Positions 25,883 through 63,292 of a DNA stretch of 64,000 bases are shown piece after piece. The translations under genes were made by a program, and so were the position numbers. The notes under the pieces are model-generated. The model made no database searches and was not told where the DNA came from. It saw only the letters and a program-made list of their open reading frames with translations. The DNA lies in assembly GCF_964188315.1 (NCBI RefSeq), contig NC_135667.1:5828001-5892000 (forward strand), read 5' to 3'. The DNA comes from Podarcis muralis (Eukaryota). Numbering within the stretch: position 1 is the first letter of the stretch; every line of letters starts with the position of its first letter.

Positions 25883-26616
25883 GGCAAATTGATATTTCAT
25901 CCAGCAGAGAGCTTTACTGAAGGCAAATGAGCATAATGGTCACAAATCCAATGCGTTCAGGATTGGCACCGTCCATAAGAAATCCAGTTACAAGAGACTT
26001 TAACTTAAACTTACAATAACTTATAATAAGACTAAAACGCTATATATAGAACACCACACCAGAAGGAAGAGAGACAGAAAGATAAAGTGAAACCCAAGCT
26101 CCTCTCAGCCGTATTATTATCCGTAGTCAGCATGACTTTGACAGAAGAAATAAGGCAGGCATGTTGAACAGGTAGATTGTGATCTGCCGGCAGATCACTG
26201 GACGTTTGTGATAGATCACCAGGGGGTAGATCACTGCCAGTTTTTAACTGTGTGAGTAGATCGCAGTCTCTTGGGAGTTGGCCACCCCTGAAATAAGGGA
26301 ACCAGTTTAAGTCAGCTGTACTCAGCTTCTCTGAAGGAACAACTCAAACATCATGAACCTTCTGCTTGTTTCTTTCACACAGAGAAAAGCTCCCAGTAAC
26401 CCTCTCAAATTAAGCAGAATAGGAAAGATCTCTGCACATCAGATCAAGAAATGCCAGCTGACAATGTGCTGGAGGGAAAGGTGTGGTGCTGCGGTTCCTG
26501 TCTTTGGGGTTTGTTTCAGCAGCACCAGATTGTTGTCTGTCGAGAGAGAGAGAGCAGGGCAAGGAGGGAGTTGGGTCCCCCAGCCGTGGGTGATCTTTGA
26601 AGGATACGGACAGAGC

Positions 26617-29600: not shown

Positions 29601-32600
29601 TCAAGTGAGGAAATCTTTTCCTCACAGAGCAACCTTGTCTTTGTAGCCATGGCAGGTGAGCATCTTTGCATTTTACTGTTTGGCGTTGTCTCTTTCATTC
29701 GCAACACAAGAGGGAGAGGAGCATTGTGTTCCGAAAGGATTTCAGACTGCCTTGAAGGTAATAAGGTACAGTGGCACCTTGGCTCTCGAACTTAATCCGT
29801 TCCGGAAGTCCGTTCGACTACCAAAACCGTTCGAAAACCAAGGCACGGCTTCCAATTGGCTGCGGGAGCTTCCTGCACTCAATCTGAATCAGCGTCAGAC
29901 ATTTGGCTTCCAAAAAACGTTCACAAACCAGAACACTTACTTCCGGGTTTGTGGCGTTCAGGAGCCAATTTGTTCGTCGACTAAGCCGTTCGAGAACCAA
30001 GGTACCACTGTACAGTGGTGCCTCGGGTTACAGATGCTTCAGGCTACAGACGCTTCATGTTACAAACTCTACTAACCCCGAAATAGTACCTCGGGTTAAG
30101 AACTTTGCTTCAGGATGAGAACAGAACAGAAATCGCTCAGTGGCAGTGGGAGGCCCCATTAGCTAAAGTGGTGCTTCAGGTTAAGAACAGTTTCAGGTTA
30201 AGAACGGACCTCCCGAACGAATTAAGTTCTTAACTAGAGGTAAAGGTAAAGGTAAAGGGACCCCTGACCATTAGGTCCAGTCGTGGCCGACTCTGGGGTT
30301 GTGGCGCTCATCTCACTTTATTGACCGAGGGAGCCGGCGTACAGCTTCTGGGGTCATGGGGCCAGCATGACTAAGCCGCTTTTGGTGAACCAGAGCAGCA
30401 CACAGAAACGCCGTTTACCTTCCCGCCAGAGCGGTACCTATTTATCTACTTGCAATTGGACGTGCTTTCGAACTGCTAGGTTGGCAGGAGCAGGGACTGA
30501 GCAACGGGAGCTCACCCCGTCGTGGGGATTCGAACCGCCGACCTTCTGATCGGCAAGTCTTAGGCTCTGTGGTTTAACCCACAGCGCCACCCGCGTCCCA
30601 TGTCAGTCTCATTCAGGCGCTGACAAATTAGACCGCTTGCTTTACTAAAACCCAAAGTGATTAGCTGTTGTGGTGATAAACCACAAGAGTGAAGTTTTTG
30701 ATGGACAATTTTAATCCAGGCGCTCTTGTGACAATCTTGCAGCCACAGAGCTGGCAATCAACGAAGCAGAATGCCAGCGTCAGAGCCATGGCTTTTCATA
30801 GAGCTGTCCAGCCAAAATAAATGCATTCGCTCTAAAAGCCAAGTGGACCACAGTCTCTTAACCATTGAGCCAAGTCATTGTCCTCAATTGATTGCTTCTC
30901 CTTTGTGAACGATCACTCTAGATCCCCATCCCTCTCCGACACTGATAGTGGATCCTCCACCTGGAGTGGTGAACGAAGGAGACTCGCTAAACCTCACTTG
31001 CCTGGCCAACGAGGGGGAGACTGAGAAAAGATTCACTTTCTACAGGGATGGACTTGCGATAACCTTCAGCGATGAAGGATCTGTGTGGAGCTTCAGAGAA
31101 CCTGGAACTAACTTCTCAAATGCCTCTGTTAGCATCTTGAAAGCCAAGCTCAACCATAGTGGAGAATTTGCTTGCAGCTATGAGGAAGAAGTTAGTGGCC
31201 GGTGGGTGACCTCTTCCAGGAGCCAGACGGTGAAAATCATGGTGAAAGTCCCAGGTGAGTCATCTGGAGAAGGTTAGAGCTCAGTTTAGCAGAAGGATAT
31301 TCCATTTTTCTGTGTTGATTGAAGTATTAAGGGGGAGCCACTGGATGGGCCAGAAAAAGGGGGGAGATTGAGCAAAATATCTGTCATTCCCTGTAACCTG
31401 TAAATGTCATCTATTTTATTTCCTATGCCTTTTGTTGTTGTTTTGTTGTTTCGTTGTGTCCGACTCTTCATGACCCCCTGGATCAGAGCACGCCAGGCCC
31501 TCCTGTCTTCCACTGCCTCCCACAGTTTGGTCAAACTCATGCTGGTAGCTTCGAGAACACTGTCCCACCATCTCGTCCTCTGCTGTCCCCTTCTCCTTGT
31601 GCCCTCCATCTTTCCCAACATCAGGGACTTTCCAGGGAGTCTTCTCTTCTCATGAGGTGGCCAAAGTCTTGGAGCCTCAGCTTCAGGATCCGTCCTTCCA
31701 GTGAGCACTCAGGGCTGATTTCCTTCAGAATGGAGAGGTTTGATCTTCTTGCAGTCCATGGGACTCTCAAGAGTCTCCTCCAGCACCATAATTCAAAAGC
31801 ATCAATTCTTCGGCGATCAGCCTTCTTTATTGGTCCAGCTCTCACTTCCATACATCACCTCAGCCTTATTGTTGGGTAAGAGTGAGCAGTTCATATCTGT
31901 GATGGATTGAAAGGAGAGAGGGGGGGGTGTTATTTGCAGGGCTCAAACATCTCTCCTCTTCAACTTGTCTAGAAAAGTCTGACCCTAGTTACTTGTCCTG
32001 AAAGTTACTCTTCAGAAGTTGAATATTTATTTTGCATGACATTTTCTGCCTGTCTCGCATCCAAGGACAAGGAAGCCTTATTAAAAACACAATAGCCTAA
32101 CCATTTTTCCTTTCTTTTCTCAGATCCTTCTCCACCATCAGGTCCATCGCTGGCATTTGCGTATTTGGCAGTCCCCTTTGTGATTCTGATGATTCTCCTC
32201 ATCTTCTACTGTGGACAGAAAAAGACTGGTAGTTACGTGATGGGTTTTGAGGATACTGTGATGCTTGTGTGAATAATATTGTGTGTGCCTTTTCAGCCTT
32301 TGGCTCTCTTTTTCTCCTCTGTGGAAGCAGTGAAATGCCAGCAGGATTCTGAGCCAGAAGAACAGGAGGAGGAGGAGGAGGAGGAGGAGGAGGAGGAGGA
32401 ACTGCGTGATCTTGAAACAGGGGAGCCCCAAACAGCAGTTTGGCAGGAACACGACCAAGTAAGCGAGGAGATTCATGTGTAATATTAGTTACATCCATGA
32501 AAAACTGCCTAACTATTATGGAATGTGGTGCTACTGCAAGATGCAATGATAGCCTACAAATGAGCAAGCTCGTGGACAGAGATCTCTATTGTGTACTGCC

Positions 32601-42932: not shown

Positions 42933-43901
42933 GCTTCCTTTACAGGCCAAGTGGACCACAAGCTCTTAACTACTAAGCCATGTCTAGCTCACCTGCTCAT
43001 AACTTCTCCTTTGTGGATGATTCCTGCAGATCCCCCTCCTTTTCCGGTGCTGAAAGTGGATCCTCCGTCTGGAGTGGTGAACGAAGGGGACTCCCTGCGC
43101 CTCACTTGCTTGGCCAATGGGACCATAACCGAGAAGAGATTCCACTTCTTCAAGGATGGTGCTGAGATGGACACCAGTCATGAAGGATCCAGAGAACCTG
43201 CAAATACCTCACCAAACGCCTCTGTGAGCATCTTACAAGCCACGGTCAACCACAGTGGAGAATTTGCTTGCAGTTATGAGGAAGCGATTGGTGGCCGATG
43301 GGTTATGTCTCCGTGGAGCAAGACAGGGAAAGTCGTGGTGAATGTCCCAGGTGAGTCATTTTGGGGAAGTGAGAGCCATCTTTAGCAGTAGCACAATCCA
43401 CTTTAATGTATTGTGTGAAAATGAGGCTATCAATATGTCTGGTCTTCCACAAGGGACACAATTATTGCCATCTTCTTTATTTCATATGCTGCGTCTCAAC
43501 CTTCATGCTTGGGGGGAATGGAGGGGGACGGATGGAGATGGAGAGGTCTGCTCACATTTTATCCTATGTTTAGAGAAGTTTTTAATATTTAATGCTGTAC
43601 AGTGGTACCTCGGGTTACAAACGCTTCAGGTTACAGACTCCGCTAACCCAGAAAAATTACCTCGGGTTAAGAACTTTGCTTCAGGATGAGAACAGAAATC
43701 GTGCTCCGGCGGCCCGACAGCAGCAGGAGGCCCCATTAGCTAAAGTGGTGCTTCAGGTTAAGAACAGTTTCAGGTTAAGAACGGACCTCTGGAACGAATT
43801 AAGTACTTAACCCGAGGTACCACTGTATTGTTTTTAACAATTGATTGGGAGCCACCCAGAGTGGCTGGGGAAACCCAGCCAGATGGGTGGGGTATAAATA
43901 A

Positions 43902-45801: not shown

Positions 45802-46417
45802 TAAATACAGTTTCGGCTGAGGTTCTCAGCATGTTGCACTGAAATCTGCTTCTTCAATGCGTGTGTTTTCACATTTCCAAGTTGAATTCTAACTTGACTT
45901 CTTTAAACTGTACTTGGGAAAGAGGAGGGGGCAGAAGCTTCTCAGAGGAGTTTGGCAGGCTGGAAGCAGCTAATACCAGCTTCCCAGAGCAGGAGCTTTC
46001 CTTCCAATCTCCCGATCATCTTTTGGCTATCCGTCTATGCAGGTAAAGTTGAGTTCTGCTCTTCCCTTCGCCCATCCTCCTGCACATTGTTCCATTTGGG
46101 TTTCTTCAAGAAGTTTGACCGCAGAGAAGAACAGGTGATGGCACTGCAAGATCAGATGTGGTTAGCAGTTTCTAGATGGCTAAAGCTTGTGGTTATGGCT
46201 AAAGCCTATAGGCCGAGTTCTGCACACAGCTCAGGGTGTGTGTCTATACAATGATCAGGAGTCAAGGGTGTGATGTTGTGCTTCCTGTCTTTAGTCTTTG
46301 CTTTGAGAAGACAGACTTCGGCAAGGCCGGTTCATTGTCTCTCTTGGGACAGAAACCAGAGAGAAGGTGGATTTGGGGCTCCAGCCGTGGTTGTTCTTCC
46401 AGGGATACTGGCTGAGG

Positions 46418-49400
46418 ATGAAGTCTGCTGCTTTGGTGACAGGTTGGTGACCTCTCTGCCCAACTCAGATTGGAAATTTGCCGTCTATCTCACATTCACA
46501 CTGCATCTCTCCTTTGCTCTTCACTTCCAGTCTGTCTCCAGATCCTCATCGGGAGATCAGTCCAGGCAGGTAAAGCGGATTTCCGTTCTTCTTTCAACTT
46601 TTCTGATAGGAGACAGAAGCTCTATGGGATGTAGGAGTGTCAGATTTTGCATGATTGGGTGGATGGCGGCTAACAGATTGAGGCTGAATCCTGACAAGAC
46701 AGAAGTACTGTTTTGGGGGACAGAGGGCGGGCAGGTGTGGAGGACTCCCTGGTTCTGAATGGGGTAACTGTGCCCCTGAAGGACCAGGTGTCCAGCCTGG
46801 GAGTCATTTTGGACTCACAGCTGTCCATGGAGGCGCAGGTCAATTCTGTGTCCAGGGCAGCTGTCTACCAGCTCCATCTGGTATGCAGGATGAGACCCTC
46901 CCTGCCTGCGGACTGTCTCACCAGAGTGGGGCATGCTCTGGTTATCTCCCACTTGACATACATGGCAACATTTTGTTGCAGGCCACCCTGGTCTCCTGCC
47001 CTGCCACACTTGGGCGGTCTTACGTTTTGCATTTTGAAGGGAAATGGGGCATCGCCAAACAAGGCTTGCTTCTTATTCCTTATCTGTTTATTTGCTTCTC
47101 AGACCCCCTTCGTCCTCCGTTCTTCTCTGTGTCCCCAAAGCTTGACACCTATAGCAGTGGGGAGATTGTGAACTTCACATGCTCTGCTCCTGAAAACCTT
47201 CTCATGTCGAGGGTTCTCTTTCGGAAGGACCGATGGCTGTTGTATGGCTACAGGCCCCCTTCTCCTCTGGCCTCCTTAACGCACATGAAGCGCTTGTTTC
47301 CTCGACACAGCGGGGATCATTTTTGCACGTACCAAGCTGCGGAATCGAGCTGGAACATCTCATCCCCCAAAAGCAGAAGGATCAGGATTTCAGTGATGGG
47401 TGAGGCCTTAAAAAACGCATTATTCCCTTGGAAGATGAAGGGGAAGGACGCCCTAGAATGTCCCAGGTTCAATCCCCGTTGTCTCCTGGTAGGTCTGGGA
47501 AACTCTCCTTCCTGAGGACCTAGAGAGAGATGCTGCCAGTCAGTGTATACAATGCTAGCAGGACCACTGGTCTGGCGTGGTTATAAGCCAGCGGGTGACA
47601 TTCTTAGATACCAGGGTTACCTCGGAAGTGGGAATCTTCTTGATATCTGCTCAGACTGCAATGTGGGTCTTTTTTTCTTGGACGATAGCGCTGTAACCCT
47701 TAGTCAAACATGAATCCAGTTACAGATAGGTAGCCGTGTTGGTCTGCCATAGTCAAAACAAGAATCGCAAGACAGAGAAACCAGTAGGAGAACACTTCAA
47801 TCTCCCAGGACATTCTATACAAGATCTCAAAGTAGCTGTTTTACTACAAAGGAATTTCAGAAATAGACTGGAAAGGGAAGCTGCTGAATTGCAACTCATT
47901 ACCAAACTTAAAACCATGGAGAGACCTGGTCTGAACAAAGACATTGGATTCTTATCTCATTATACATGACAAAGCCATTTTTCACCATCTCACCCCTTAC
48001 TTTTTCCTGTAAGACCTATTGCAGTCGTTAAGAGTCGTCAACAGGCTCATCACAGCTATCTGCCAATCACCCATTCCCACCACCCTTCTGAGTAATACCC
48101 CTCCCCACCTTCTCACTATATAGAAGGATCTGGCAACTTCTGTTTCAGTGTATCTGAAGAAGTGTGCATGCACACGAAAGCTCATACCAAGAACTAACTT
48201 AGTTGGTCTTTAAGGTGCTACTGGAAGGAATTTTTTTTGTTTCAAACATGAATACTACTCATGAGTAAGAAACCAGGCAAGGGGCCTAGGGGCAAGCTGG
48301 AAAGCTCCGACACATCACCCTCATATCAGTTACTTCTTTTATAATAATTTTTGTTGGTTTTACAATCTGGTTTTAAATTCACAGAAAAAATCCAATAAAA
48401 AAATACAGAATTCTCGGACCCTCCCTTTTGTGGAGTCCACAAATAACCCTTTTCACTGTAAATCATATTATCCTCCAAAAAACTCTATTTTCTCCTATAG
48501 TTCTTTTCACATTGCAAGTGTTATTTCAACCTTGGTAATGTTTTTAACCGTTTACAGTGTTCTGTGAAATATATTACAATCTGCCCCCTGATATAGCCCT
48601 GAAAAATTATGGAACGCTTCACAAATTTGCGTGAAAAAAATTATAGCCCTGAAAAAATATGGAACGCTTCACAAATTTGCGTGTCATCCTTGCACAGGGG
48701 CCATGCTAATTTTTCCTGTATCATTCCAATTTTAGTACTGCTAGGTTGGCAGGAGCAGGGACCAAGCAACGGGAGCTCACCCCGTCGTGGGGATTAGAAC
48801 CGCCAACCTTCTGATCGGCAAGTCCTAGGCTCTGTGGTTTAACCCACAGCGCCACCCGCGTCCCTTGACATGAGTAGTACAGATCCTCAAACAGGGATCA
48901 AGAGTTTAGCCAGCTAACATTTACCTTCCCGGACACTGCACATTTCCCCTGAATGTTGCGCAACACAGGCTCCTGATCTTCTACTCTCCCCTCCTGAAGT
49001 CCAAGTGGGGAATTCATGAACCCACAACTCTCTGTTGGCAACCCTGCCTGGATTAACCCGATTTAGTTATGGCTTGCCCCTTAAAACCTCCGTGAGCCAC
49101 AGACTCCTAATCACTTAGCCATTGTACTCATTTTCCTTTACGGACGGCTCCTGTAGCTCCTCCTCCTGCCCCGGTGCTGACAGTGGCTCCTCCGTCTGGA
49201 GTGGTGAAGGAAGGGGGATTCCTGCGCCTCACTTGCTCGGCCTTTGGCAGCGACGCAGAGCAAAGGTTCCATTTCTACAAGGATGGGGTCAAGATTTCCT
49301 CCAGCAGTGAAGAGTCTCTGGCGGACTCCGGAGAACCCAGGAATGCCTTCTTGAACGCCTCTGCAGACATCCTGGTCCAAGTCACAGCCAGCATCTACAC

Positions 49401-52400
49401 TGGGGGATTTGCTTGCAGGTATGAGCAAAAACTGAGCAGCCGATGGATCATGTCTCCCTGGAGCCAAACAGTGAATCTCACAGGTGAGCCATGCCCCAAT
49501 ATTTCACAAATATTAATTCATAACAATCCAAATGGGACCCCTGTCCATTAGGTCCAGTCGCGGACGACTCAGGAGTTGCAGCGCTCATCTTGCTTTATTG
49601 GCCGAGGGAGCCGGTGTACAGCTTCCGGGTCATGTGGCCAGCATGACTAAGCAGCTTCTGGCAAACCAGAGCAGCGCACGGAAACGCCGTTTACCTTCCC
49701 GCCGGAGTGGTACCTATTTATCTACTTGCACTTTGACGTGCTTTTGAACTGCTAGGTTGGCAGGAGCTGGGACCGAGCAATGGGAGCTCACCCCGTCGCG
49801 GGGATTCGAACCGCCAACCTTCTGATCGGCAAGCCCTAGGCTCTGTGGTTTAACCCACACACAGTCAAGCATTAATACTACTCATGAGTAGGAAACCATG
49901 CAAGGGGCCTGGGGGCATGCTGGAAAGTACTGACACATCACCCTCATACCAGTTGGTACTTCTTTTATAACTATTTTTATTGGTTTTACAATTTGGTTTT
50001 ACATTCACAGAAAAAATCCAATAAAAATACAGAATTCTCAGACTTCCACCCTCCCTTTTGTGGGGTCCACAAATAACCCTTTTTTACTGCAAATCATATT
50101 ATCCTCCATAAAACTCTATTTTCTCCTATATTTCTTTTCACATTGCAAGTGTTATTTCAATCTTGGTAATGTTTTTAACAGTTTACAGTGTTCTGTCAAA
50201 GATGTTACAATTTCCCCCCAGTCCTTATTAAAAAATATATAGCCCTGAAAAAATATGGAACGCTTCACTCATTTACGTGACATCCTTGCGCAGTGGCCAT
50301 GCTAATTTTCCCTGTATCATTCCAATTTTAGTACATGTGTTGCGGAAGGGGTCACCACCCTCATACCATTGACAGATGGTGAAGGTCTGAAGTGGGGAGA
50401 CCCCTCTATGGTACCAGTGGAGACTCCTAGGGCAATTTAGGGGATGTGATGGCTTACACATGACATGAGTAGTACAGATCCTCAAACAGGGATCAAGAGT
50501 TTAGGCAGCTAACATTTTCCTTCCCGGACACTGCACATTTCCCCTGAATATTGTGCAACAGATGCTCCTGATCTTCTCCTCTCCTCTCCCCTCCTGAAGT
50601 CCAAGTGGGGAATTCATGAACCCACAACTCTCTGTTGGCAACCCTGCCTGGATGAACCCGATTTAGTTATGGCTTGCCCCTTAAAACCTCCGTGAGCCAC
50701 AGACTCCAAATCACTTAGCCATTTTATTCATTTTCTTTTACGGACAGCTCCTGTAGCTCCTGTAGCCAGTGTGTTGTAATGGTTAAGAGTGGTAGACTCG
50801 TAATCTGATGAACTGGGTTCGCGTCTCTGCTCCTCCACATGCAGCTGCCCCACTCACCTCACAGAGTGTTTGTGGTGGGGGAGGAAGGGAAAGGGAGAAT
50901 GTTAGCTGCTTTGAGACTCCTTCGGGTATTGATAAAGTGGGATATCACATCCAAACTCTTCTTCTTCTTCTTCCTCCTGCCAGGGATTGAATCTCCCTGC
51001 CAGGGTTTGAATTTAGGACAAGCAGATAGATGGTCTGACATTGAGCAACAGCTTTTCCTCATCTTGTGGTCCCTCCTAACACCCTCTCCTTTATGGACAG
51101 CTCCTGTAGCTCCTCCTCCTGCCCCGGTGCTGACAGTGGACCCTCCGTCTGGAGTGGTGAAGGAAGGGGGATTCCTGCGCCTCACTTGCTCGGCCTTTGG
51201 CAGCGACGCAGAGCAAAGGTTCCATTTCTACAAGGATGGGGTCAAGATTTCCTCCAGCAGTGAAGAGTCTCTGGCGGACTCCGGAGAACCCAGGAATGCC
51301 TTCTCGGGCGCCTCTGCAAACATCCTGGTCCAAGTCACAGCCAGCATCCACACTGGGGGATTTGCTTGCAGGTATGAGCAGAAACTGAGCAGCCGATGGA
51401 TCATGTCTCCCTGGAGCCAAACGGTGAATCTCACAGGTGAGCCATGCCCCAATATTTTACAAATATTAATTCATTTCAATCCAAATGGGACCCCTGACCA
51501 TTAGGTCCAGTGGTGGCCGACTCTGGGCTTGCGGCGCTCATCTCGCTTTACTGGCCGAGGGAGCAGCTTCCGGGTCATGTGGCCAGCATGACTAAGCCGC
51601 TTCTGGTGAACCAGAGCAGCGCACGGAAACGCCGTTTACCTTCCTGCCAGAGCGGTACCTATTTATCTACTTGCACTGCCATGCTTTCGAACTGCTAGGT
51701 TGGCAGGAGCAGGGACCGAGCAACGGGAGCTCACCCCGTTACGGGGATTCAAACCGCTGACCTTCTGATTGGCATGCCCTAGGCTCTGTGGTTTAACCCA
51801 CAGCGCCACCCACGTCCCTTGACATGAGTAGTGCAGATCCCCAAACGGGGATTAAGAGTTTAGCCCGCTAACCTTTACCTTCCCGGACACTGCACATTTC
51901 CCCTGAATGTTGCGCAACACAGGCTCCTGATCTTCTACTCTCCCCTCCTGAAGTCCAAGTGGGGAATTCATGAACCCACGACTCTCTGTTGACAACTGTG
52001 CCTGGATGAACCCAATTTAGTTATGGCTTGCCCCTTAAAACCTCCGTGAGCCACAGACTCCTAATCACTTAGCCATTGTATTCATTTTCCTTTATGGACG
52101 GCTCCTGTAGCTCCTCCTCCTGCCCCGGTGCTGACAGTGGATCCTCCGTCTGGAGTGGTGAACGAAGGGGGATTCCTGCGCCTCACTTGCTCGGCCTTTG
52201 GCAGCGACGCAGAGCAAAGGTTCCATTTCTACAAGGATGGGGTCAAGATTTCCTCCAGCAGTGAAGAGTCTCTGGCGGACTCCGGAGAACCCAGGAATGC
52301 CTTCTTGAACGTCTCTGCAAACATCCTGGTCCAAGTCACAGCCAGCATCTACACTGGGGGATTTGCTTGCAGGTATGAGCAGAAACTCAGCAGCCGATGG

Positions 52401-55400
52401 ATCATGTCTCCCTGGAGCCCAACAGTGAATGTCACAGGTGAGCCATGCCCTAATATTTTACAAACATTAATTCATTTCAATCCAAATGGGACCCCTGACC
52501 ATTAGGTCCAGTGGTGGCCGACTCTGGGCTTGCGGCGCTCATCTCGCTTTACTGGCCGAGGGAGCAGATTCCGGGTCGTGTGGCCAGCATAACTAAGCCG
52601 CTTCTGGTGAACCAGAGCAGTGCACGGAAACGCCGTTTACCTTCCCGCCAGAGCGGTACCTATTTATCTACTTGCACTGCCATGCTTTCGAACTGCTAGG
52701 TTGGCAGGATCAGGGACCGAGCAATGGGAGCTCACCCCATCACGGGGATTCAAACCGCTGACCTTCTGATCGGCATGCCCTAGGCTCTGTGGTTTAACCC
52801 ACAGCGCCACCCGCGTCCCTTGACATGAGTAGTACAGATCCCCAAAGGGGATTAAGAGTTTAGCCCGCTAACATTTACCTTCCCGGACACTGCACATTTC
52901 CCCTGAATGTTGCGCAACACATGCTGCTGATCTTCTCCTCTCCCCTCCTGAAGTCCAAGTGGGGAATTCATGAACCCACGACTCTCTGTTGACAACTGTG
53001 CCTGTATGAACCCGATTTAGTTATGGCTTGCCCCTTAAAACCTCCGTGAGCCACAGACTCCTAATCACTTAGCCATTGTACTCATTTTCCTTTACGGACG
53101 GCTCCTGTAGCTCCTCCTCCTGCCCCGGTGCTGACAGTGGATCCTCCGTCTGGAGTGGTGAATGAAGGGGGATTCCTGCGCCTCACTTGCTCGGCCTTTG
53201 GCAGCGACGCAGAGCAAAGGTTCCATTTCTACAAGGATGGGGTCAAGATTTCCTCCAGCAGTGAAGAGTCTCTGGCGGACTCCGGAGAACCCAGGAATGC
53301 CTTCTCAAACGCCTCTGCAAACATCCTGGTCCAAGTCACAGCCAGCATCCACACTGGGGGATTTGCTTGCAGGTATGAGCAGAAACTGAGCAGCCGATGG
53401 ATCATGTCTCCCTGGAGCCAAACGGTGAATGTCACAGGTGAGCCATGCCCCAATATTTTACAAATATTAATTCATAACAAACCAAATTACATACCCATAA
53501 TTAGAGATTTCTCCAAATTTCTGGATTTTCCATCTTCCCCTCCGTGGGTCCTATTGTACACCCTCTTAACTGCATATTTTTCCACAATCCGTATTTTATA
53601 TCTTCCCATCTTGTCCATAATATTAGTTACATTGCAAGTGTTATTAAAATCCTGCTAGGGTTTTCACCTGTTACAGTGATCACCTAGATAAATTATAAAT
53701 TTCCCCCTTTCTTTATTGAAGTTTAGTTCTCCTTGGTTCCTGAGTCTTCCAGTCAGTTTTGCCATTTCGGCATAGTCCAACAGTTTTATTTGCCTTTCTT
53801 CTCTGGTAGGGACACAATTTTCTTTCCATCTCTAGGCTAGCAGCATCCATGTGGCTGTTGTCGCATACATATAATGTCTTTTCTGTTCCTTTGGTATATC
53901 GGTATACCAATATACTGATATGTTTTTAACTTCACTGAATTACTGTTACTGCGTCTTCAACAACAACGGCTGCAATGGAGTCTCTCCTCCCTTTATTCGT
54001 GTTGTTGTTGTTGTTGTTGTTGAGTCGTTTTGTCGTGTTGGACTCTTCGTGACCCCCTGGACCAGAGCACACCAGGCCCTCCTGTCTTCCACTACCTCCC
54101 GCAGTTTGGTCAAACGCATGCTGGTAGCTCCGAGAACACTGTCCAACCATCTCGTCCTCTGCCGTCCCCTTCTCCTTGTGCCCTCCATCTTTCCCAACAT
54201 CAGGGTCTTTTCCAGGGAGTTTTCTCTTCCAATGAGGTGGCCAAAGTATTGGAGCCTCAGCTTCAGGATCTGTCCTTCCAGTGAGCACTCAGGGCTGATT
54301 TCCTTCAGAATGGATACATTTGATCTTCTTCCAGTCCATGGGACTCTCAAGAGTCTCCTCCAGCACCAGAATTCAAAAGCATCCATTCTTCGGCGATCAG
54401 CCTTCTTTATGGTCCAGCTCTCACTTCCATACATCACTACTGGGAAAACCATGGCTTTAACTATATGGATCTTTGTTGCCAAGGTGATGTCTCTGCTTTT
54501 TAAGATGCTGTCTACGTTTGTCACTGCTTTTCTCCCAAGGAGCAGGCGTCTTTTAATTTCGTGACTGCTGTCAGCATCTGCAGTGATCATGGAGCCCAAG
54601 AAAGTGAAATCTCTCACTGCCTCCATTTCTTCCCCTTATATTTGCCAGGACCCCTTATTCATACCAACAGCCAAATCCCCTTCTTTCCTTTCTGCAGTTT
54701 GGGCACCAAATTGCTCTTCGTCACCCCTGCTATATGCACGCTGGGCGATTCCACTGGTGATCCTGATGGTCCCTCTTGCTTTTTACTGCACGAGAAGAAA
54801 GAGAGGTAGGTGATGCTGGAGACTGTGGGCCTCTCATATCATTGGCCCAGTATACCTGAAGGAGCAACTCCACCTCCATCACTCAGCCCAGACACTGAGG
54901 TCCAGCTCCGAGGGCCTTCTGGTGGTTCACTCCCTGCGAGAAGCCAAGTTACAGGAAACCAGGCAGAGGGCCTTCTCGGTGGTGGCACCCACCCTCTGGA
55001 ACGTCCTCCCATCAGATGTCAAGGAAATAAACTACTATCTGAATTTTAGAAGGCATCTGAAGGCAGCCCTGTTTAGGGAAGTTTTTGATGTTTGATCATG
55101 TTTTTAATATTCTGTTGGAAGCCACCCAGAGTGGCTGGGTAACCCAAAAGGTGGGCAGGGTATACATAAATTATTATTATCATTATTATTATTACTACTA
55201 CTACTACTACTACTACCTATGTATGTAGAAGCCTGCTTAAGATCTTTAGGGGATAATGCTCCTCTCTGTGTCGTGAGAGTGGTGGCCGTGAGAGCAGTGT
55301 TGGTTAAAAGCAACAAAACCAAGCATTTGTTTTGTCTTCCTTCGTATTGGATGTGGTTAGGGTGTGGGAGGGAGCCTTGCCTGTGTCTGTCCTGTGGAAC

Positions 55401-56929
55401 TACCAGCCTCAAGAGGTTTGTTTTCAGGTCTCACCACCTTTCTTCTCTTTTCTCTTTTCATTTCCACTTTGGAAGCGTTGAAATCTGAGCAGGAAAACAA
55501 GGAAGAAGCAAATTCTGAGTATGTTGAAATGTTCAGCGCCACTAGGAAGCCTCAGAGGTAACGGCAACTAATGCTAGTATAACACTGATGTGATGTGTGT
55601 GTGTCTTCATAATTTCTTATTTATTTAAAGCATTTCTTCCAAAAAGTGGCTGACCAAAATAACAATGGTGGTGGCACAAAAGGAGGAAGGGAGGAGCGAA
55701 ATAGCCAGCTCAGGCAGCAGTTCAGTTCTTAAAGTTTTGAACATAGTTGGAGGCGAAGAGCACCCACAAACCATGCAAGGAGTTTCCAGAGGGGAGGAAA
55801 ACTTGAACCCAGAGCCTGGCAACCTGGAAATGCAGGAGAGACTTATCAGTCAAGAGAGGGACAACGTCCTGTTGGCTGGGAGATAAAAGGGTGAAAGGAG
55901 ACTGGAGGAACAGGCAGCGGGGGGTGTCCCAGGCTGAAAAAGGAGCCAGAGACCCCACAGGAAGAAGCATAGAATTGTAGAATTGGAAGGGACCCGGTGG
56001 ATCATCTAGTCCAGCCCCCTGCAATGCAGGAATATTCAGCTGCCCCTTACGGGGATCAAACCTGCAACCTTGGCATCATCAGCACCACGCTCTAGCCAAC
56101 TGAGCTATCCAGGAAGAAGGACCAAAAGGACAAGTTTGGGGGTTTCAGATAAGGAGGGGGAAATGATTGGCATGTTGGAGAGAAGGGAAGATGTCTGAAA
56201 GAGATGGGGTGGCTGGGACAGGGATAGAGCGATGGGGCAGGGAAAGGTGGAGGCAGAAGGGGAGAAGGGAGCAGATTCGTTGAGTTGCTTGACCACTCAC
56301 CTTTGCCAAGAGCTGCTGTGTGTATTCTCTGTGTAAAAAAACTGGGAGAGAAATTGTGGAACCATTTAAAAACGAACCTTTGATAATACATTAACTGGCT
56401 CCCTCCCCCACAATCTCTATTTAAGGAAATAGAAACTGAGCTATGGAATTGGCTGCTACAGGATGTGGTTTAGATGCCCTTTGAAAAGAGGTACATTTGT
56501 GAAGAATATTCTGCCAAAGCATTTTAGTCATGACAGCTAAATAGGTCTTCACTGTGCAGAAGCAGTCTACCTCTGAATTGCTGTGCACTGGAGATAAGGA
56601 AAAGAGGAGGGTGGCCTGTTTGTGAGTTGCCCAGGAGTGTCCAGCTGGCTGCTGTCAAAACTTGATGATGCGAACCTTCAATTTGCTCCCAACAGCCTTG
56701 GGGGGATCATCATTCTTTGAACATGTCCCTCAATTTCCTTCTCCTTTTCAGGACTCAGATGCCTTTTACTGCCTTGCCGCCCCCTGCTCTGCCTCAGCCC
56801 CCAATATCGCAATTATGGATGGAGAGCGGAGCCAAACTGGCCGAAGACCAGGAGGAAGGTCTCTACAACTACATTCCCCTTCAGGGCAAGAAGAGAGCAG
56901 ACCGATACAGAGATTCTGAAGAAGAATGA
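46418..56929 (+). CDS. Ig-superfamily receptor 'gene C' (5 Ig, TM Arg, YxxM / Pro-rich / YxxI tail; 678 aa if all exons are used)
   Basis: Exons 46418-46442, 46531-46569, 47103-47399, 49157-49483, 51110-51436, 52111-52437, 53111-53437, 54698-54805, 55476-55557, 56752-56929 (2037 nt, open). Signal MKSAALVTVCLQILIGRSVQA; TM LLYARWAIPLVILMVPLAFYC; last-exon choice less certain. Confidence 0.78.
46641..46946 (+). mobile_element. L2 LINE internal fragment
   Basis: GWMAANRLRLNPDKTEVLF...LGVILDSQLSMEAQVNSV. Confidence 0.85.
47716..48241 (+). mobile_element. Penelope-like element remnant (GIY-YIG end + pseudo-LTR)
   Basis: KPVGEHFNLPGHSIQDLKVAVL...GLNKDIGFLSHYT*; flanked by direct repeat tcaaacatgaat (47704-47715, 48242-48253). 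Confidence 0.85.
48150..48187 (+). ncRNA. minimal type-I hammerhead ribozyme motif of the Penelope pseudo-LTR
   Basis: GTAT-CTGAAGA-A-GTGTGCATGCACAC-GAAA-GC-TC-ATAC: conserved core, stem II GTGTG/CACAC, stem I GTAT/ATAC. Confidence 0.75.
48652..48738 (-). pseudogene. RNU6: U6 snRNA retrocopy (5'-truncated), duplicate of the U6/L1 chimera
   Basis: aaaatatggaacgcttcacaaatttgcgtgtcatccttgcacaggggccatgctaat = reverse complement of U6; local ~50-bp tandem duplication at 48594-48633. Confidence 0.88.
49952..50355 (-). pseudogene. RNU6: U6 snRNA / L1 3'-end chimeric retrocopy (U6 part 50248-50355)
   Basis: Full-length diverged U6 joined at its T-tract to an L1 ORF2 end (NKDWGEIVTSLTEHCKLLKTLPRLK*) and 3'UTR; 13-bp repeat caccctcatacca at 49939-49951 and 50356-50368; no upstream TATA/PSE. 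Confidence 0.82.
50764..50972 (+). mobile_element. tRNA-derived CORE/MIR-like SINE
   Basis: A-box gtgttgtaatggttaagagt, B-box ctgggttcgcgtc, actcacctcacagagtgtttgt core, (CTT)n tail. Confidence 0.7.
53470..53915 (-). mobile_element. L1 LINE 3' fragment
   Basis: Homologous to 40010-40600 on minus strand. Confidence 0.7.
53999..54650 (-). mobile_element. BovB LINE, 5'-truncated
   Basis: ORF 53946-54626 EAVRDFTFLGSMITAD...GVTKSPTRQND; (CAA)n tail. Confidence 0.92.
54832..55215 (+). mobile_element. L2 LINE 3' fragment
   Basis: gaggtccagctccgagggccttctgg...ccacccagagtggctgg with (TTA/CTA)n tail. Confidence 0.82.
55968..56110 (-). mobile_element. Squam3-like tRNA-derived SINE with CR1-type tail
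   Basis: Reverse complement GGATAGCTCAGTTGGCTAGAGCGTGG...GGTTTGATCCCC...ATTCTACAATTCTATG. Confidence 0.75.
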
Positions 56930-59085: not shown

Positions 59086-62000
59086 TCACACAGCACCTGC
59101 CCTTTCCACTTCTGGGCCATCTCTTTCCTGCACAGCCTCGTGGTGGCTTTGTTGAGGATGGAAGAGAAGATCGCTGTAGAGGACCTCTTCGTCTTTTGCC
59201 GAGATGGGATCGTTCTTCAGCGTTGGTTCAGAGGCAGTCACAGTCGGTGGGGAGGCAATGGTGGCATAGGTGACGTCTGAGCTCTGAGGATGGAGAGGGA
59301 AACGGAGGGTGACCCACGGTTCAAGCTGGAAAGCAGAAATGGCTCAGGAACAGTCCATTGAGAAGGAGGTTTCTTTCCCAGTGTACCCCCCAGGGCTCTC
59401 TGCAAAATATACTTCAAACGGGATGACCAGCAAAATACCGTATTTTTCAATCTATAAGACGCCCCCAGGTATAAGATGCCCCCTATTTTGGGGGACTCAA
59501 ATATAAGAAAATGGGGGGAGATGTATCCATGTATAAGACACCCCCTAATTTTTGACATTATTTTTAGGGGGGGACCTAGTGTTCTAACACGGAAAAATAT
59601 GGTAATTTCTGGCACACACATAAGAACTTAAGAATATACACCAGGGGTCAGCAACCTTTTCCAGCCGTGGGCCAGTCCACCATCCCTCAGACCTTGTGGG
59701 GGGTCCAGACTATATATTTTTTTTCGGGGGGGGATGAACAAATTCCTATGCCCCACAAATAACCCAGAGATGCATTTAAAATAAAAGGACACATTCTACT
59801 CATGTAAAAACATGCTGATTCCCGGACTGTCCACGGGCCGGATTGAGAAGGCGATTGGGCTGGATTCAGCCCCCAGGCCTTAGGTTGCCTATCCCTGATA
59901 TACACCTTTAGGCGCCAGGCAAAAACATTCCTCTTTAACCAGGTCTTTGGCCTATTGACACCCAATGCCCTTTTAAATGTGTTGTGGGAGGTGGGATTAC
60001 TGGTTTCTTATTTTTATCATGCATTTTTTTGTTATTTTATACTGTACAGTGGTACCTCGGGTTAAGTACTTAATTCATTCTGGAGGTCCGTTCTTAACCT
60101 GAATCTGTTCTTAACCTGAAGCACCACTTTAGCTAATGGGGCCTCCTGCTGCTGCCGTGCCACTGCTGAGCGATTTCTGTTCTCATCCTGAAGCAAAGTT
60201 CTTAACCTGAGGTACTATTTCTGAGTTTGCGGAGTCTGTAACCTGAAGCGTCTGTAACCTGAAGCGTCTGTGACCCGAGGTACCACTGTAATTTGATGTT
60301 GTGAACCGCCCTGCGATCTGTGGATGTAGGGCAGTATACAAATAATAATAGAATAATAGATTTGCAGGGCTAGGCTAGTGGCCCATCTAGTCCAACATCC
60401 TGTTCTCGCAGTAGCCAACCTGATGCCTGTGGGAAACCCAGGAGCAGCATCCGAGCACAAGAGCAAAACTCTCCCCTCCTGTAGCTTCTAGCAACTGGTG
60501 CTCAGAAGCTTTGCTGCCTCCAGCTGTGGAGGCAGACAATAGCCACTGTGGTGAGCGGCCGCAACGGATGTGGCTGAATCAGTTCGTAAGTTCTGTTTTC
60601 TGTTTCTGACCTTGGCCTGACATATGTACCTGGGAACCTCACAGCCTATCGGGTAATCATCCCTTTTTGTTTATCACCCGGAGTAGTTTGGAAAGGACGC
60701 AGTTGGTGCTGTGGTCTAAACCACTGAGCCTCTTGGGCTTGCCGGTCGGAATCTTGGGCTTGCCGATCGAATCCCCGCGACAGAGTGAACTCCCGTTGCT
60801 CTGTCCCTTCTCCTGCCAACCTAGCAGTTCGAAAGCACGCCATTGCAAGTAGATAAATAGGTACCGCTGTGGCGGGAAGGTAAACGGCATTTCCATGCGC
60901 TCTGGCACTTGTCACAGTGTTTCCATTGCACCAGAATCGGTTTAGTCCTGCTGGCCACATGACCCGGAAAGCTGTCTGTGAACAAACACCAGCTCCCTTG
61001 GCCTGAAAGCGAGATGAGCGCCGCAACCCCAGTCGCCTTTGACTGGACATAACCATCCAGGTGTCCTTTACCTTTTTTTTTTTTTTGCCTTACCTTAGTT
61101 TGTGGGGTGGGGGATAAGGGCTGTAGCTGAGTGGCAAGGTATCTGCACTGCATGCAACAGCTCCCAGGTTTGATCCCTGATGGTATCTTCAGGTAGACTC
61201 CAGTCTGAAACCCTCAAGAGCCACTACCAGTCAATGCAGATAATACTGAGCTAGGCTGGCCAATGACTTGGTATAAAGGAGCTTCTTGTGTTCCTTTGTC
61301 CATGGATGGCCAATTTAGCAGTTATAGACACAAGAGGTTCACGAGTTCTTTTTTTGGTTTTGGTTTCCATTCAAGTGGCCATCCCCACTCCTGGCTGTAG
61401 CTAATTCTCTAAGGACAGCTACACACTTGTTTACTTTCTCACCTGGACGGAAGACCAATCATTACAATTCCTAAGCTTCTTTGAAAGCGATCCTGACCCA
61501 TAAAACTGGTTTCAGTAAGAGGATGGACTCATTTCCCGAGCTCAGATGGAAGCAAAATGCAAACCTAAACCTTTCTACTTACTTTGACCTGAAAGTCTGT
61601 CTTTTGGGGTACCAACAACCCAAACATGTCTTGACTTGTTTCCTCCTTGCTTTCCTTTGTCTCAGATGCTAGCTGATATTTTGATGTGCCCAAGGCAAAA
61701 AGAACTAGAGAGAGAGAGAAAGGGAGTGAAAAGTTAAAAGTATGGTTATGCACCATCCTTATCTCTGATCTGTGAGAGACTCCACAAATTCCTGCACTGA
61801 TCCAGGACTCTGTTTCCTTGGAATGAAGGTCAGCAGAGACTGTGGTGTCTCTAGGGTATATGGTTTTATTTACACACATAAACAACCAGAGCATAGGATG
61901 GAAGGTATCATAGTACTGACATCTCCATAGATCTTGCTTCCCCTTTAGCTTTCCAGGACAGCCCCCAAACCCAGAGCAAACATGTCTCTCTCTTAGAGAT

Positions 62001-62509
62001 GGGAAAGCCTGGGGAAAACCCAGAAAAATTGGAAAGAAACCTGTCCCCAACCCCAATTTTTCTGCCCCCCCCCCCCGGGGGGGGGGGGGGCTTTCTCCAG
62101 CTTCCAGCTCTCACACAACTCTGCCTATTGTTCTCCTATGTAGGTAGGTAAGGAGCTGGAAGAAAAGCCAACCCATCTATTCTATGACACAGAGCGTCTT
62201 TTTTCGTTATGCTAAATTGTGGTACTTAACTAGCCAGCCCAAGTCATTAACTTAACAAAGTGGGCTGGTTTCCACTTACAGATTGTATTATTATGGGATT
62301 TTTAATAGCAGTGCATAGTTAATCTATGGAACTAGGCCCAAAGGGAGGCAGGCTCTTCTTCTGGGGTTTAAGTTGGATGGTCCCAAGGGCCCATCACTTA
62401 CTGCCTTTCTTTCTCCAACAATAGTACGCAAACACGACTGCCGGGATCAGAAGCAGACTAGCCCACCATACATGCCCCATTGATGTAGCAGATGAATCTG
62501 GCAACTGAG
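59086..62509 (-). CDS. Ig-superfamily inhibitory receptor 'gene D', TM and cytoplasmic exons (5' part outside window)
   Basis: Minus-strand exons 62509-62402 (TM VWWASLLLIPAVVFAYYCW-RKKG, GTAAGT donor), 61704-61583, optional 61478-61443, terminal 59283-59086 (SSDVTYATI...EEVLYSDLL...GAV*); phases 1-1-0-0 consistent. Confidence 0.82.
59642..59897. mobile_element. hAT-type MITE
   Basis: TIRs caggggtcagcaacc / ggttgcctatccctg; perfect 8-bp TSD atatacac. Confidence 0.88.
60047..60288. mobile_element. Tc1/mariner-superfamily MITE (cagtggtacc family)
   Basis: TIRs with TA TSD. Confidence 0.85.
60695..61075 (+). mobile_element. Sauria SINE (older subfamily)
   Basis: ggacgcagttggtgctgtggtctaaaccactgagcc...gtcctttacc tail. 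Confidence 0.8.
61118..61295 (+). mobile_element. old tRNA(Ala)-headed SINE
   Basis: gggctgtagctgagtgg...ggtttgatccctg...ccagtcaatgcagataatactgagctag; related fragments at ~22222, ~33040, ~47455. Confidence 0.6.
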
Positions 62510-62704
62510 CTGTGAAGATAAAAAATAAAGGAGCGGGGATGTGCTTAAAAACACACTAACAGGCTTCAAGACAAGTACATAACACAATGTTGAAAGCAAG
62601 TCTTTAAAGAAATAAATTATTTATACATACATACATACATACATACATACATACACTGTGGGCGGCTCACAATATAATATTATAAACATGATAAGACATC
62701 AAAT

Positions 62705-63292
62705 ATTAAAAAATTTCCTAAGCAGGGCGCCTTCAGGTGTCTTCTAAAAGTCAGGTAGTTGTTTATTGATGGGAGGGCATTCCACAGGGCGGGAGCCACT
62801 ACCAAGAAGGCCCTCTGCCTTTTGATGATATGAACTAGCCAAACTTAACTCACCTATAATGGAAACCTCAATGCAGTTACTCCGTTCAGACAGTTGTCCT
62901 GCACTGTTTTCTTCCAAGTAGGCGTTCCACAGGGCGGGCACCACCACTGAGAAGGCCCTCTGCCTGGTTCCCTGTAACCTCACTTCTCGCAGGGAGGGAA
63001 CTGCCAGAAGGCCCTCAGACCTGGACCTCTGTGTCTGGGCTGAACGATGGAGGTGGAGACGCTCCTTCAGATATACTGGACCGAGGCCGTTTAGGGCTTT
63101 CAAGGTCAACACCAACACTTTGAATTGTGCGCGGAAACATACTGGGAGCCAATGTAGGTCTTTCAAGACCAGTGTTATATGGTTTTGGTGGCTGCTCCCA
63201 GTCACCAGTCTAGCTGCCGCATTCTGGATTAGTTGTAGTTTCCAGGTCACCTTCAAAGTTAGCCCCATGTAGAGCACATTGCAGTAGTCCAA
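62705..63292 (-). mobile_element. L2 LINE 3' fragment
   Basis: ORF 62744-63292 DYCNVLYMGL...DLHWLPVCFRAQFKVL. Confidence 0.88.

What the first reader, a model, noticed from the sequence alone, without database searches (positions are those of the whole stretch)
48250..53470. Intragenic tandem amplification of one Ig exon to four copies with a mosaic substitution pattern
Four 327-nt phase 1-1 exons are all open, with intact TAG acceptors and GTGAGC donors. They differ at 9 amino-acid positions in a patchwork: K/K/N/N and L/L/V/V (1,2 vs 3,4), but L/S/L/S and Y/H/Y/H (1,3 vs 2,4). Changes cluster in NAF[L/S][N/G][A/V]SA[D/N], which gains or loses an N-glycan sequon (copy 2 lacks it). The SINEs in the units after exons 2 and 3 share the same internal deletion, so they were duplicated with the unit. 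Inference: unequal crossing-over produces a copy-number-variable stalk, analogous to CR1 or LPA repeats, and symmetric exons allow in-frame skipping.
Basis: partly seen in the sequence, partly recalled or inferred. Interest (0 to 1): 0.75.

Follow-up and report, generated by a model that had tools for sequence, protein, structure and literature searches.

The report
Four-copy Ig exon array, lizard receptor
A lizard immune-receptor gene really does carry four tandem, intact copies of one antibody-like domain exon that have traded short stretches of sequence. Public annotations of turtle and snake relatives show the same kind of repeated domain, so it is a clean but ordinary example.

Summary
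Four 327-nt, phase 1-1, open Ig exons lie at 49157, 51110, 52111 and 53111. All have tag| acceptors and |gtgagc donors. They differ at 15 nt and 9 residues, in exactly the patchwork described. Copy 2 lacks the N-x-S sequon, and the SINEs after copies 2 and 3 share an 8-nt and a 2-nt deletion.

The exons encode the second (D2-type) Ig domain of an LRC/FcR-like receptor gene ("gene C"). Its leader, D1 and stalk/TM exons are intact and all phase 1.

The mosaic is real. Nine site patterns conflict with the best tree, against 0.4-2.1 expected even with CpG hypermutation (P<=0.0004). The copies have therefore exchanged sequence. The history has several steps: unit 1 versus the rest differs by about 10% in outer flanks but 2.4-4.8% near the exon, and units 3 and 4 differ by about 3% throughout.

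A second SINE sits 5 nt inside the exon-2 acceptor, with a 25-nt target duplication that creates a decoy acceptor.

Near-identical tandem D2 domains also occur in annotated turtle and snake proteins, so this is a new member of a known kind. The scan had already noted gene conversion between neighbours A and B in this window.

The parts
46418..46442 (+). Gene C leader exon 1 (ATG; leaves phase 1)
   Evidence: Read from the sequence. The leader region 46381-46594 is 79% identical to the leader region of gene A at 26580-26805. It encodes MKSAALVT, as at the N-terminus of the Podarcis proteins XP_053218793 (P0006) and P0162.
46531..46569 (+). Gene C leader exon 2, 39 nt, phase 1-1
   Evidence: ag|TCTGTC...GGCAG|gtaaag (one search showed my first coordinates one base too low).
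47103..47399 (+). D1-type Ig exon, 297 nt, phase 1-1, open
   Evidence: Weak Pfam Ig_2 match. 74-80% identical to the D1 domains of Podarcis relatives.
48242..48722 (.). Element A. It holds a U6 retro-pseudogene on the minus strand; Rfam places the match at 48653-48758, beyond the end of A, while by eye the U6 sequence breaks off at the junction with the SINE head (48722/48723). A is a copy of A' (49865-50318).
   Evidence: 9.9% substitutions and 5 gap events against A'. U6 match. No other copy in the window.
48723..48865 (-). 5' (tRNA-like) head of a minus-strand Sauria-type SINE, abutting the intron segment upstream of copy 1
   Evidence: Alignment A1. 93% identical to the head after copy 1.
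49157..49483 (+). D2 copy 1 (unique residues A11, D71)
49534..49859 (-). SINE after copy 1. It lacks the shared deletions, its head is cut short by about 12 nt, and A' follows directly.
   Evidence: Its body is 9-11% diverged from the SINE bodies after copies 2 and 3.
49865..50460 (.). A' plus X: a second copy of element A with a complete U6 pseudogene (50249-50355, minus strand) and about 105 nt of unique sequence. Present only between copies 1 and 2.
50737..50761 (+). Left copy of the target-site duplication: a decoy copy of the exon-2 acceptor (tag| at 50756) plus the first 5 exon nt
   Evidence: 25 nt with 1 mismatch against 51090-51114. Both copies carry the unit-2-specific A in gacAgct. 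Read in phase 1, a stop follows after 6 complete codons.
50762..51089 (+). 328-nt SINE-like insertion (tRNA-like head, CTT run) lying between the two target-site copies, 5 nt into exon 2
   Evidence: Absent from units 1, 3 and 4, with no other copy in the window.
51110..51436 (+). D2 copy 2 (G67, so it lacks the N-x-S sequon)
   Evidence: Its new upstream 40 nt are 70% pyrimidine and contain a ctaac motif.
51487..51819 (-). SINE between copies 2 and 3, with an 8-nt and a 2-nt deletion
52111..52437 (+). D2 copy 3 (unique V68, P104)
52488..52820 (-). SINE between copies 3 and 4, with the same two deletions
   Evidence: Its body is 2.5% diverged from the previous SINE.
53111..53437 (+). D2 copy 4. 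No SINE follows; homology between units ends at 53487.
54698..54805 (+). Stalk/transmembrane exon, 108 nt, phase 1-1, with no charged residue in the membrane span
   Evidence: 66% identical in DNA to the TM exon of gene B. 95% identical in protein to the P. lilfordi model P0163.
55476..55557 (+). First cytoplasmic exon
   Evidence: 100% identical to P0163 residues 338-365.

Best explanation
The window holds an intact lizard (Podarcis-like) LRC/FcR-type receptor gene. Its second Ig-domain exon (D2 type) has been amplified in tandem to four copies, predicting a type I membrane protein with one D1 and four D2 domains. The repeat unit is about 1 kb: roughly 300 nt of upstream intron, the 327-nt exon, 50 nt of downstream intron and one minus-strand SINE.

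The array grew in more than one step. The split between unit 1 and the rest is older, and the tandem copying that gave units 3 and 4 (SINE carried along) is younger. After that, the copies exchanged short tracts by gene conversion or unequal exchange. This produced the patchwork and kept the exon and its near flanks more alike than the outer flanks.

A later SINE insertion duplicated the acceptor of copy 2. Because every exon from leader exon 2 to the TM exon is phase 1-1, gain, loss or skipping of copies keeps the frame.

Shown: the anatomy, the intact frames, and the need for exchange between copies. Inferred: that all four copies are spliced in, the order and mechanism of the steps, and any functional effect of the longer ectodomain.
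For: The four open symmetric exons and their splice sites are.

Domain identity: Pfam Ig_3/Ig_2. The best solved relatives are FCRL5 for the amplified copy and FCRL5, PIR-B, LILR and Fc gamma/epsilon receptors for gene B's D2 exon. The AlphaFold model is an Ig sandwich with pLDDT 76.8, and OSCAR, LILRB2 D3D4, LAIR1 and FCRLA are among its top structural rows.

Gene context: D1/D2 exon pairs of neighbouring genes lie at 29364/30924 and 39616/43032. The leader, D1, TM and cytoplasmic exons of gene C are intact and in phase.

Exchange: informative sites fall into all three possible 2/2 partitions, in blocks along the unit. Nine sites are incompatible with the best tree, against a simulated mean of 0.36 (uniform rates), 1.3 (CpG x10) and 2.1 (CpG x20); P=0, 0 and 0.0004. 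A runs test for blockiness gives P=0.015.

Heterogeneous divergence: A versus A' is 9.9% and the SINE body after copy 1 versus the later ones is 9-11%. The 291-nt upstream intron differs by only 4.5-4.8% and the exon by 2.4-2.8% (Fisher P=0.007-0.06). Units 3 and 4 differ by a uniform 2.4-4.2%.

Constraint: pN/pS is 0.31-0.94, and there are no indels in the 1308 exon nt, against indels in the flanks.

Not an assembly expansion: the units differ by 2.4-10% and carry unit-specific insertions.
Against: There is no read or transcript evidence, because both tools that could give it were unavailable. No protein from this locus, with any number of copies, is in the 5.8-billion-protein collection within 251-1069 aa.

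The decoy acceptor ahead of copy 2 may disturb splicing. A simple one-step SINE-SINE crossover model does not fit, because no SINE lies before copy 2 or after copy 4. When CpG-context sites are dropped, too few informative sites remain for the block test (P=0.58). The related Podarcis gene models each show only one D2 domain of this kind.
Confidence: 0.7

Rival explanations
1. Assembly artefact: haplotypes or collapsed reads were laid out as extra tandem units, so the real gene has fewer copies.
For: Units 3 and 4 are spaced regularly (1001 and 1000 nt). No reads could be laid on the region.
Against: Every pair of units differs by 2.4-10%, including indels. Unit 2 alone has a 328-nt insertion with a target-site duplication, and A'/X lies only between copies 1 and 2. 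That is far more than usual allelic difference, and expansion artefacts give near-identical copies.
Confidence: 0.07
2. The array is real DNA, but the gene is a decaying or partly dead locus. Only one or two copies, or none, reach mature mRNA, and the remaining exons drift.
For: No annotated or assembled protein from this locus was found. pN/pS is not far below 1. Exon divergence between units 3 and 4 equals their intron divergence. There is a decoy acceptor before copy 2.
Against: All eight exons examined are open with canonical splice sites. There are no indels in the 1308 nt of repeated exon, while the flanks have several. Both cysteines and the core of each domain are kept, and the 142-nt exon core is invariant in all four copies (P=0.002-0.02).
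Confidence: 0.18
3. The patchwork comes from recurrent mutation at hypermutable CpG sites, not from exchange.
For: Within the exon, two of the three 13|24 sites (49352, 49470) are CpG transitions. The N18 codons differ by a CpG transition.
Against: Non-CpG sites also conflict (48968, 48983, 49127, 49396, 49522-49523). Simulation with a 20-fold CpG rate gives 2.1 conflicting sites against 9 observed, P=0.0004.
Confidence: 0.03
4. Diversifying selection on a ligand-contact loop drives the differences between copies, so each copy binds differently.
For: Four of the nine variable residues (five of the ten non-synonymous changes) lie in codons 66-71, at the end of the long C'-E loop and the start of strand E, and include the gain or loss of a glycan site. 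In Fc gamma receptors the C'-E loop of the second domain contacts the ligand (established structural knowledge, not tested here).
Against: pN/pS is below 1 for every pair, counts are tiny, and several of the states also occur in paralogues of other Podarcis species.
Confidence: 0.1

Closest known systems
Multi-domain FcR/LRC-related receptors of sauropsids annotated as 'Fc receptor-like protein 5', 'alpha-1B-glycoprotein-like' or 'IGSF1-like' (turtles, snakes)
   Same: They carry the same D2-type domain (40-52% identity), repeated in tandem with very high internal identity. Pangshura tecta P0167 has four copies at 94-100%. Gopherus P0168 has two at 99%. Mauremys XP_044842640 has three at 88-94%. 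Naja naja KAG8141025 and KAG8141081 have pairs at 99% and 96%. The unnamed P0161 has the layout SP-D1-D2x4-TM.
   Different: Those amplifications are independent and lineage-specific. Here the genomic units, SINE boundaries and exchange pattern are visible, whereas those are only protein models.
Human FCRL5, mouse PIR-B and LILR (FcR/LRC Ig-like receptors)
   Same: C2-type Ig domains, each on its own phase-1 exon; a split leader; paired inhibitory and activating neighbours; and sequence similarity (FCRL5 E=1.6e-14 for the amplified copy; for gene B's D2 exon FCRL5 E=5.3e-12 and PIR-B E=6.9e-9). Intragenic recombination and domain shuffling are described as the family's mode of evolution (PMC2413239).
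   Different: [quoted passage not shown] Orthology to any mammalian gene is not shown. The repeated domains of FCRL5 are much older and more diverged.
CR1 long homologous repeats and LPA kringle IV-2 (copy-number-variable intragenic repeats)
   Same: Tandem, in-frame, exon-bearing units that could gain or lose copies by unequal exchange.
   Different: From general knowledge, those repeats are nearly identical and are proven to vary between people. Here units differ by 2.4-10%, and variation between individuals is untested.
Gene conversion between paired immune receptors
   Same: Short-tract homogenisation of ligand-side exons between neighbouring copies.
   Different: Here the exchange is between exons of one gene rather than between genes.

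Membership tests
FcR/LRC Ig-like receptor superfamily | Extracellular C2-type Ig domains with the conserved Cys pair, and sequence similarity to family members | tested here: met
   Pfam Ig_3/Ig_2. FCRL5 matches the amplified copy; FCRL5, PIR-B, LILR and Fc receptors match gene B's D2 exon. C27 and C87 (109-residue numbering) are kept in all four copies. The model is an Ig fold.
FcR/LRC Ig-like receptor superfamily | One Ig domain per exon, all introns in phase 1 | tested here: met
   The D1 exon, the four D2 exons and the TM exon all enter and leave in phase 1.
FcR/LRC Ig-like receptor superfamily | Split leader with a short second exon of family-typical length (21 nt in FcR/FCRL, PMC2413239; 36 nt in LRC genes, from memory) | tested here: inconclusive
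   The leader is split, but the second exon is 39 nt. This is nearer the LRC length but equal to neither.
FcR/LRC Ig-like receptor superfamily | Signalling module: ITIM tail, or a charged TM residue for an adaptor | tested here: inconclusive
The TM span has no charged residue. I did not analyse the tail.
Copy-number-variable intragenic repeat (CR1 / LPA type) | Tandem in-frame exon units | tested here: met
Copy-number-variable intragenic repeat (CR1 / LPA type) | Near-identity of units, giving long tracts for unequal exchange | tested here: not met
   Units differ by 2.4-10%, and the longest identical tract is 142-163 nt.
Copy-number-variable intragenic repeat (CR1 / LPA type) | Different copy numbers in different individuals | not testable with these tools
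SINE-mediated unequal crossover (Alu-Alu type exon duplication) | Same-orientation SINEs flanking the duplicated segment, with junctions inside a SINE | tested here: inconclusive
   Minus-strand SINEs bound units 1, 3 and 4, and the unit ends coincide with SINE ends. But there is no SINE before copy 2 or after copy 4. The SINE after copy 1 is no closer to the later ones (88%) than to unrelated copies in the window (90-92%).

The most novel reading that the evidence does not exclude
The D2 array is a length-polymorphic ectodomain. Under this reading, wall lizards differ in copy number, and splicing yields receptors with two to five Ig domains. The independent, recent D2 amplifications in turtles, snakes and lizards would then reflect repeated selection for a longer or multivalent receptor, for example to escape or reach a pathogen ligand.
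Probability: 0.2. Interest if true: 0.55.

Novelty: new member of a known kind. Interest (0 to 1): 0.3.

Why it matters
It gives a fully resolved genomic example of how Ig-receptor ectodomains lengthen. The example shows a 1-kb exon-plus-SINE unit, stepwise copying, later exchange between copies, and a fresh SINE hit on a splice site. It also shows that the same domain type has been amplified independently in several reptile lineages. It is useful for annotating squamate immune-receptor clusters, where current gene models of related species fuse or truncate these genes. It does not open a new mechanism.

Tried and rejected
- **Repeat finder.** Tandem Repeats Finder saw nothing, because the period exceeds 500.
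- **Word search.** Searching with one exon found only one 125-aa genomic ORF.
- **Length-window searches.** Two further searches found no product of this locus.
- **Structure search.** Foldseek against the PDB gave no hit at E<=0.001, only generic Ig folds.
- **Flanks of the paralogues.** The flanks of the D2 exons in genes A and B share no DNA similarity with the unit, so they cannot serve as an outgroup.
- **One-step SINE-SINE crossover.** Rejected as the whole story, because the terminal units lack the expected SINEs.
- **CpG recurrence.** Rejected as the cause of the mosaic.
- **Positive selection.** Not supported, since pN/pS is below 1.
- **Age estimates.** Not given as results, because I have no checked squamate substitution rate.
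- **Complex prediction.** Not used; no binding claim is made.
Full report
**1. Observation**

The region holds four direct repeats with start-to-start spacing of 1953, 1001 and 1000 nt. Reading the sequence and extracting the exons gives four 327-nt exons, at 49157-49483, 51110-51436, 52111-52437 and 53111-53437. Each is preceded by ...ctcctgtag| and followed by |gtgagccatg.

The first two bases of each exon complete a codon and one base is left over at the end. The exons are therefore phase 1-1, and all four are open.

Pairwise differences are 6-11 nt. Copy 2 has G67 and so lacks the N-x-S sequon that the other three carry.

The SINEs after copies 2 and 3 share an 8-nt and a 2-nt deletion, plus many substitutions, relative to the SINE after copy 1.

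**2. What the exons are**

tblastn of copy 1 against the window finds paralogous exons at 43032-43325 (55% identity) and 30924-31238 (47%). Each is preceded by a different Ig exon type, at 39616 and 29364. A third exon of that first type lies at about 47103-47399, ahead of the array.

So the window holds neighbouring genes, each with a D1 exon and a D2 exon, and the third gene ("gene C" in earlier notes of the scan) has its D2 exon four times.

- Pfam calls all of these exons Ig_2/Ig_3.
- The best solved relative of the amplified copy is FCRL5. Gene B's D2 exon matches FCRL5, PIR-B, LILR and the Fc gamma/epsilon receptors.
- An AlphaFold model built on 26 relatives is an Ig sandwich with mean pLDDT 76.8. 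It has a long low-confidence loop at residues 49-64.
- Foldseek gives only weak generic Ig matches. OSCAR, LILRB2 D3D4, LAIR1 and FCRLA are among the top rows.

Gene C is otherwise intact. It has a leader exon with ATG at 46418-46442, a 39-nt second leader exon at 46531-46569, and the D1 exon at 47103-47399. After the four D2 copies come a 108-nt stalk/TM exon at 54698-54805, with no charged residue in the span, and a cytoplasmic exon from 55476. Every exon from leader exon 2 to the TM exon is phase 1-1.

**3. Anatomy of the repeat**

Self-comparison shows a unit of about 1 kb. It consists of roughly 300 nt of upstream intron, the exon, 50 nt of downstream intron, and a minus-strand tRNA-derived SINE of a family with a dozen copies in the window.

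Units 2 to 3 and 3 to 4 follow this plan exactly. Unit 1 is preceded by only the head of such a SINE, joined to an element A (48242-48722) that contains a U6 retro-pseudogene. Rfam places that U6 match at 48653-48758, running past the end of A into the SINE head.

Between copies 1 and 2 lies a second copy of A with a complete U6 (A', 49865-50318), followed by about 105 nt of unique sequence. No SINE follows copy 4.

Unit 2 carries a private 328-nt SINE-like insertion (50762-51089). It is flanked by a 25-nt direct duplication with one CpG mismatch. Both halves carry the unit-2-specific base, so this is a target-site duplication.

The insertion lies 5 nt inside the exon, so the original acceptor now sits upstream as a decoy at 50756. 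Read in phase 1, a stop follows the decoy after 6 complete codons. The true exon 2 has a new SINE-derived upstream tract that is 70% pyrimidine and contains a ctaac motif. Whether copy 2 is spliced correctly is open.

**4. The mosaic**

I aligned the 667 homologous columns of the four units and listed all variable sites. All three possible 2/2 partitions occur, in blocks along the unit:

| Region | Partition | Sites |
|---|---|---|
| Upstream intron | 12\|34 | 4 |
| Upstream intron | 13\|24 | 2 |
| Upstream intron | 12\|34 | 4 |
| Upstream intron | 14\|23 | 2 |
| Exon | 12\|34 | 1 |
| Exon | 13\|24 | 3 |
| Exon | 12\|34 | 1 |
| Downstream intron | 14\|23 | 2 |

A simulation on the best tree gives 0.36, 1.3 and 2.1 incompatible sites when CpG rates are raised 1-, 10- and 20-fold. 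Nine were observed (P=0, 0 and 0.0004). A runs test for blockiness gives P=0.015 with all sites and 0.059 with adjacent sites merged. With non-CpG sites alone it has no power. Exchange between copies is therefore required.

Comparison with D2 domains of other Podarcis proteins shows that several of the alternative states (L66, D71, L/V108) also circulate in paralogues.

**5. Age and constraint**

| Comparison | A vs A' | SINE body | 291-nt upstream intron | Exon |
|---|---|---|---|---|
| Unit 1 vs the others | 9.9% | 9-11% | 4.5-4.8% | 2.4-2.8% |
| Unit 3 vs unit 4 | – | 2.5% | 3.1% | 2.4% |

For unit 1 against the others the divergence is heterogeneous (Fisher P=0.007-0.06). Units 3 and 4 differ evenly: their SINE heads are also only 4.2% apart.

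I read this as an older split of unit 1 whose exon and near flanks were later partly homogenised, followed by a younger copying that gave units 3 and 4. A one-step SINE-SINE crossover does not fit the ends of the array.

pN/pS between copies is 0.31-0.94. A 142-nt core of the exon is invariant in all four copies (P=0.002-0.02). The exons have no indel, while the flanks have several. This suggests mild constraint and gives no sign of positive selection.

Four of the nine variable residues, carrying five of the ten non-synonymous changes, lie at the end of the long C'-E loop and the start of strand E.

**6. Relatives**

A profile-free search of 1.84 billion representatives gave 545 hits. Many reptile proteins carry two to six domains of this type.

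Internal copies are near-identical in:
- Pangshura tecta 'FCRL5' (four copies at 94-100%)
- Gopherus (99%)
- Mauremys 'A1BG-like' (88-94%)
- two Naja naja proteins (96% and 99%)

One unnamed 608-aa protein has the same layout, SP-D1-D2x4-TM. Tandem amplification of this exon type is thus recurrent in sauropsids. The literature on FcR/KIR-related receptors already describes intragenic recombination and domain shuffling as their mode of evolution (PMC2413239).

The closest proteins are Podarcis models with one D2 each, and several look mis-built:
- Three isoforms of one gene named only 'Podarcis' (the species name was cut in the output; XP_053218793, its isoform X1 XP_053218791, and P0160) read through the D2 donor.
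- P. lilfordi 'receptor 5' (P0163) joins gene B's domains to half a D2 and the TM exon of gene C.
- P. muralis XP_028560738 starts with a tail exon of one gene and continues into another.

No product of this locus was found in the collection within 251-1069 aa.

**7. What could not be done**

Copy-number variation, assembly correctness by reads, and transcription or exon skipping therefore remain untested.

The case against an assembly artefact rests on the 2.4-10% divergence between units and on their private insertions.

**8. Verdict**

This is a real, well-preserved, multi-step tandem amplification of the D2 Ig exon in an intact LRC/FcR-like receptor gene, with statistically supported exchange between copies and a recent SINE hit on one acceptor. 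It is a new member of a known and, in reptiles, evidently common kind.

Its mechanism is partly right: exchange is supported, while a young CR1/LPA-like hyper-variable repeat is unlikely. Its population and splicing claims are untested.

Noticed in passing
window 50737-51114: A 328-nt SINE-like element landed 5 nt inside exon 2 of the array, with a 25-nt target-site duplication. This leaves a decoy acceptor at 50756 whose reading frame stops after 6 complete codons.
   Followed up: yes
window 48653-48758 and 50249-50355, minus strand: Two U6 snRNA retro-pseudogenes (Rfam 84.5 and 89.7 bits) sit inside the duplicated element A/A'. By eye, the first breaks off at its junction with a SINE head (48722/48723), although Rfam aligns the full model across it.
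   Followed up: partly
P0006, P0151, P0160 (isoforms of one 'Podarcis' gene; species name cut in the tool output): All three isoforms end by reading through the D2 donor (...NLT then GEPCP...), the same intron start as in this window. This is either a secreted read-through isoform or an annotation artefact.
   Followed up: no
P0005 (P. muralis XP_028560738), P0163 (P. lilfordi 'receptor 5'): Both look like fused or mis-joined models. P0005 begins with a cytoplasmic tail exon like that of gene C (window 56750-56884) and ends with exons like gene D on the minus strand (59089-62923). P0163 joins gene B's D1-D2 to half a D2 and the TM exon of gene C.
   Followed up: partly
P0167 (Pangshura tecta), P0168 (Gopherus), P0003 (Mauremys), P0002/P0012 (Naja naja), P0161: Independent, very recent tandem amplifications of the same D2-type domain (internal identity up to 100%) occur in turtle and snake proteins.
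   Followed up: partly
window 49210-49351 and the matching parts of copies 2-4: A 142-nt stretch of the exon (strands B to C' and most of the long loop) is identical in all four copies, while 15 sites vary in the remaining 185 nt (P=0.002-0.02).
   Followed up: partly
window 46570-47102: Gene C has no exon for the extra N-terminal Ig domain that related Podarcis proteins carry between the leader and D1. That intron holds a reverse-transcriptase-like open frame instead (46713-47171).
   Followed up: no
window 53946-54626, minus strand: A 226-aa open frame in the intron between copy 4 and the TM exon looks to me, by eye, like the C-terminal part of a LINE reverse transcriptase. tblastn finds similar stretches on the + strand at 4733-4828, 27148-27243 and 54349-54444.
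   Followed up: no
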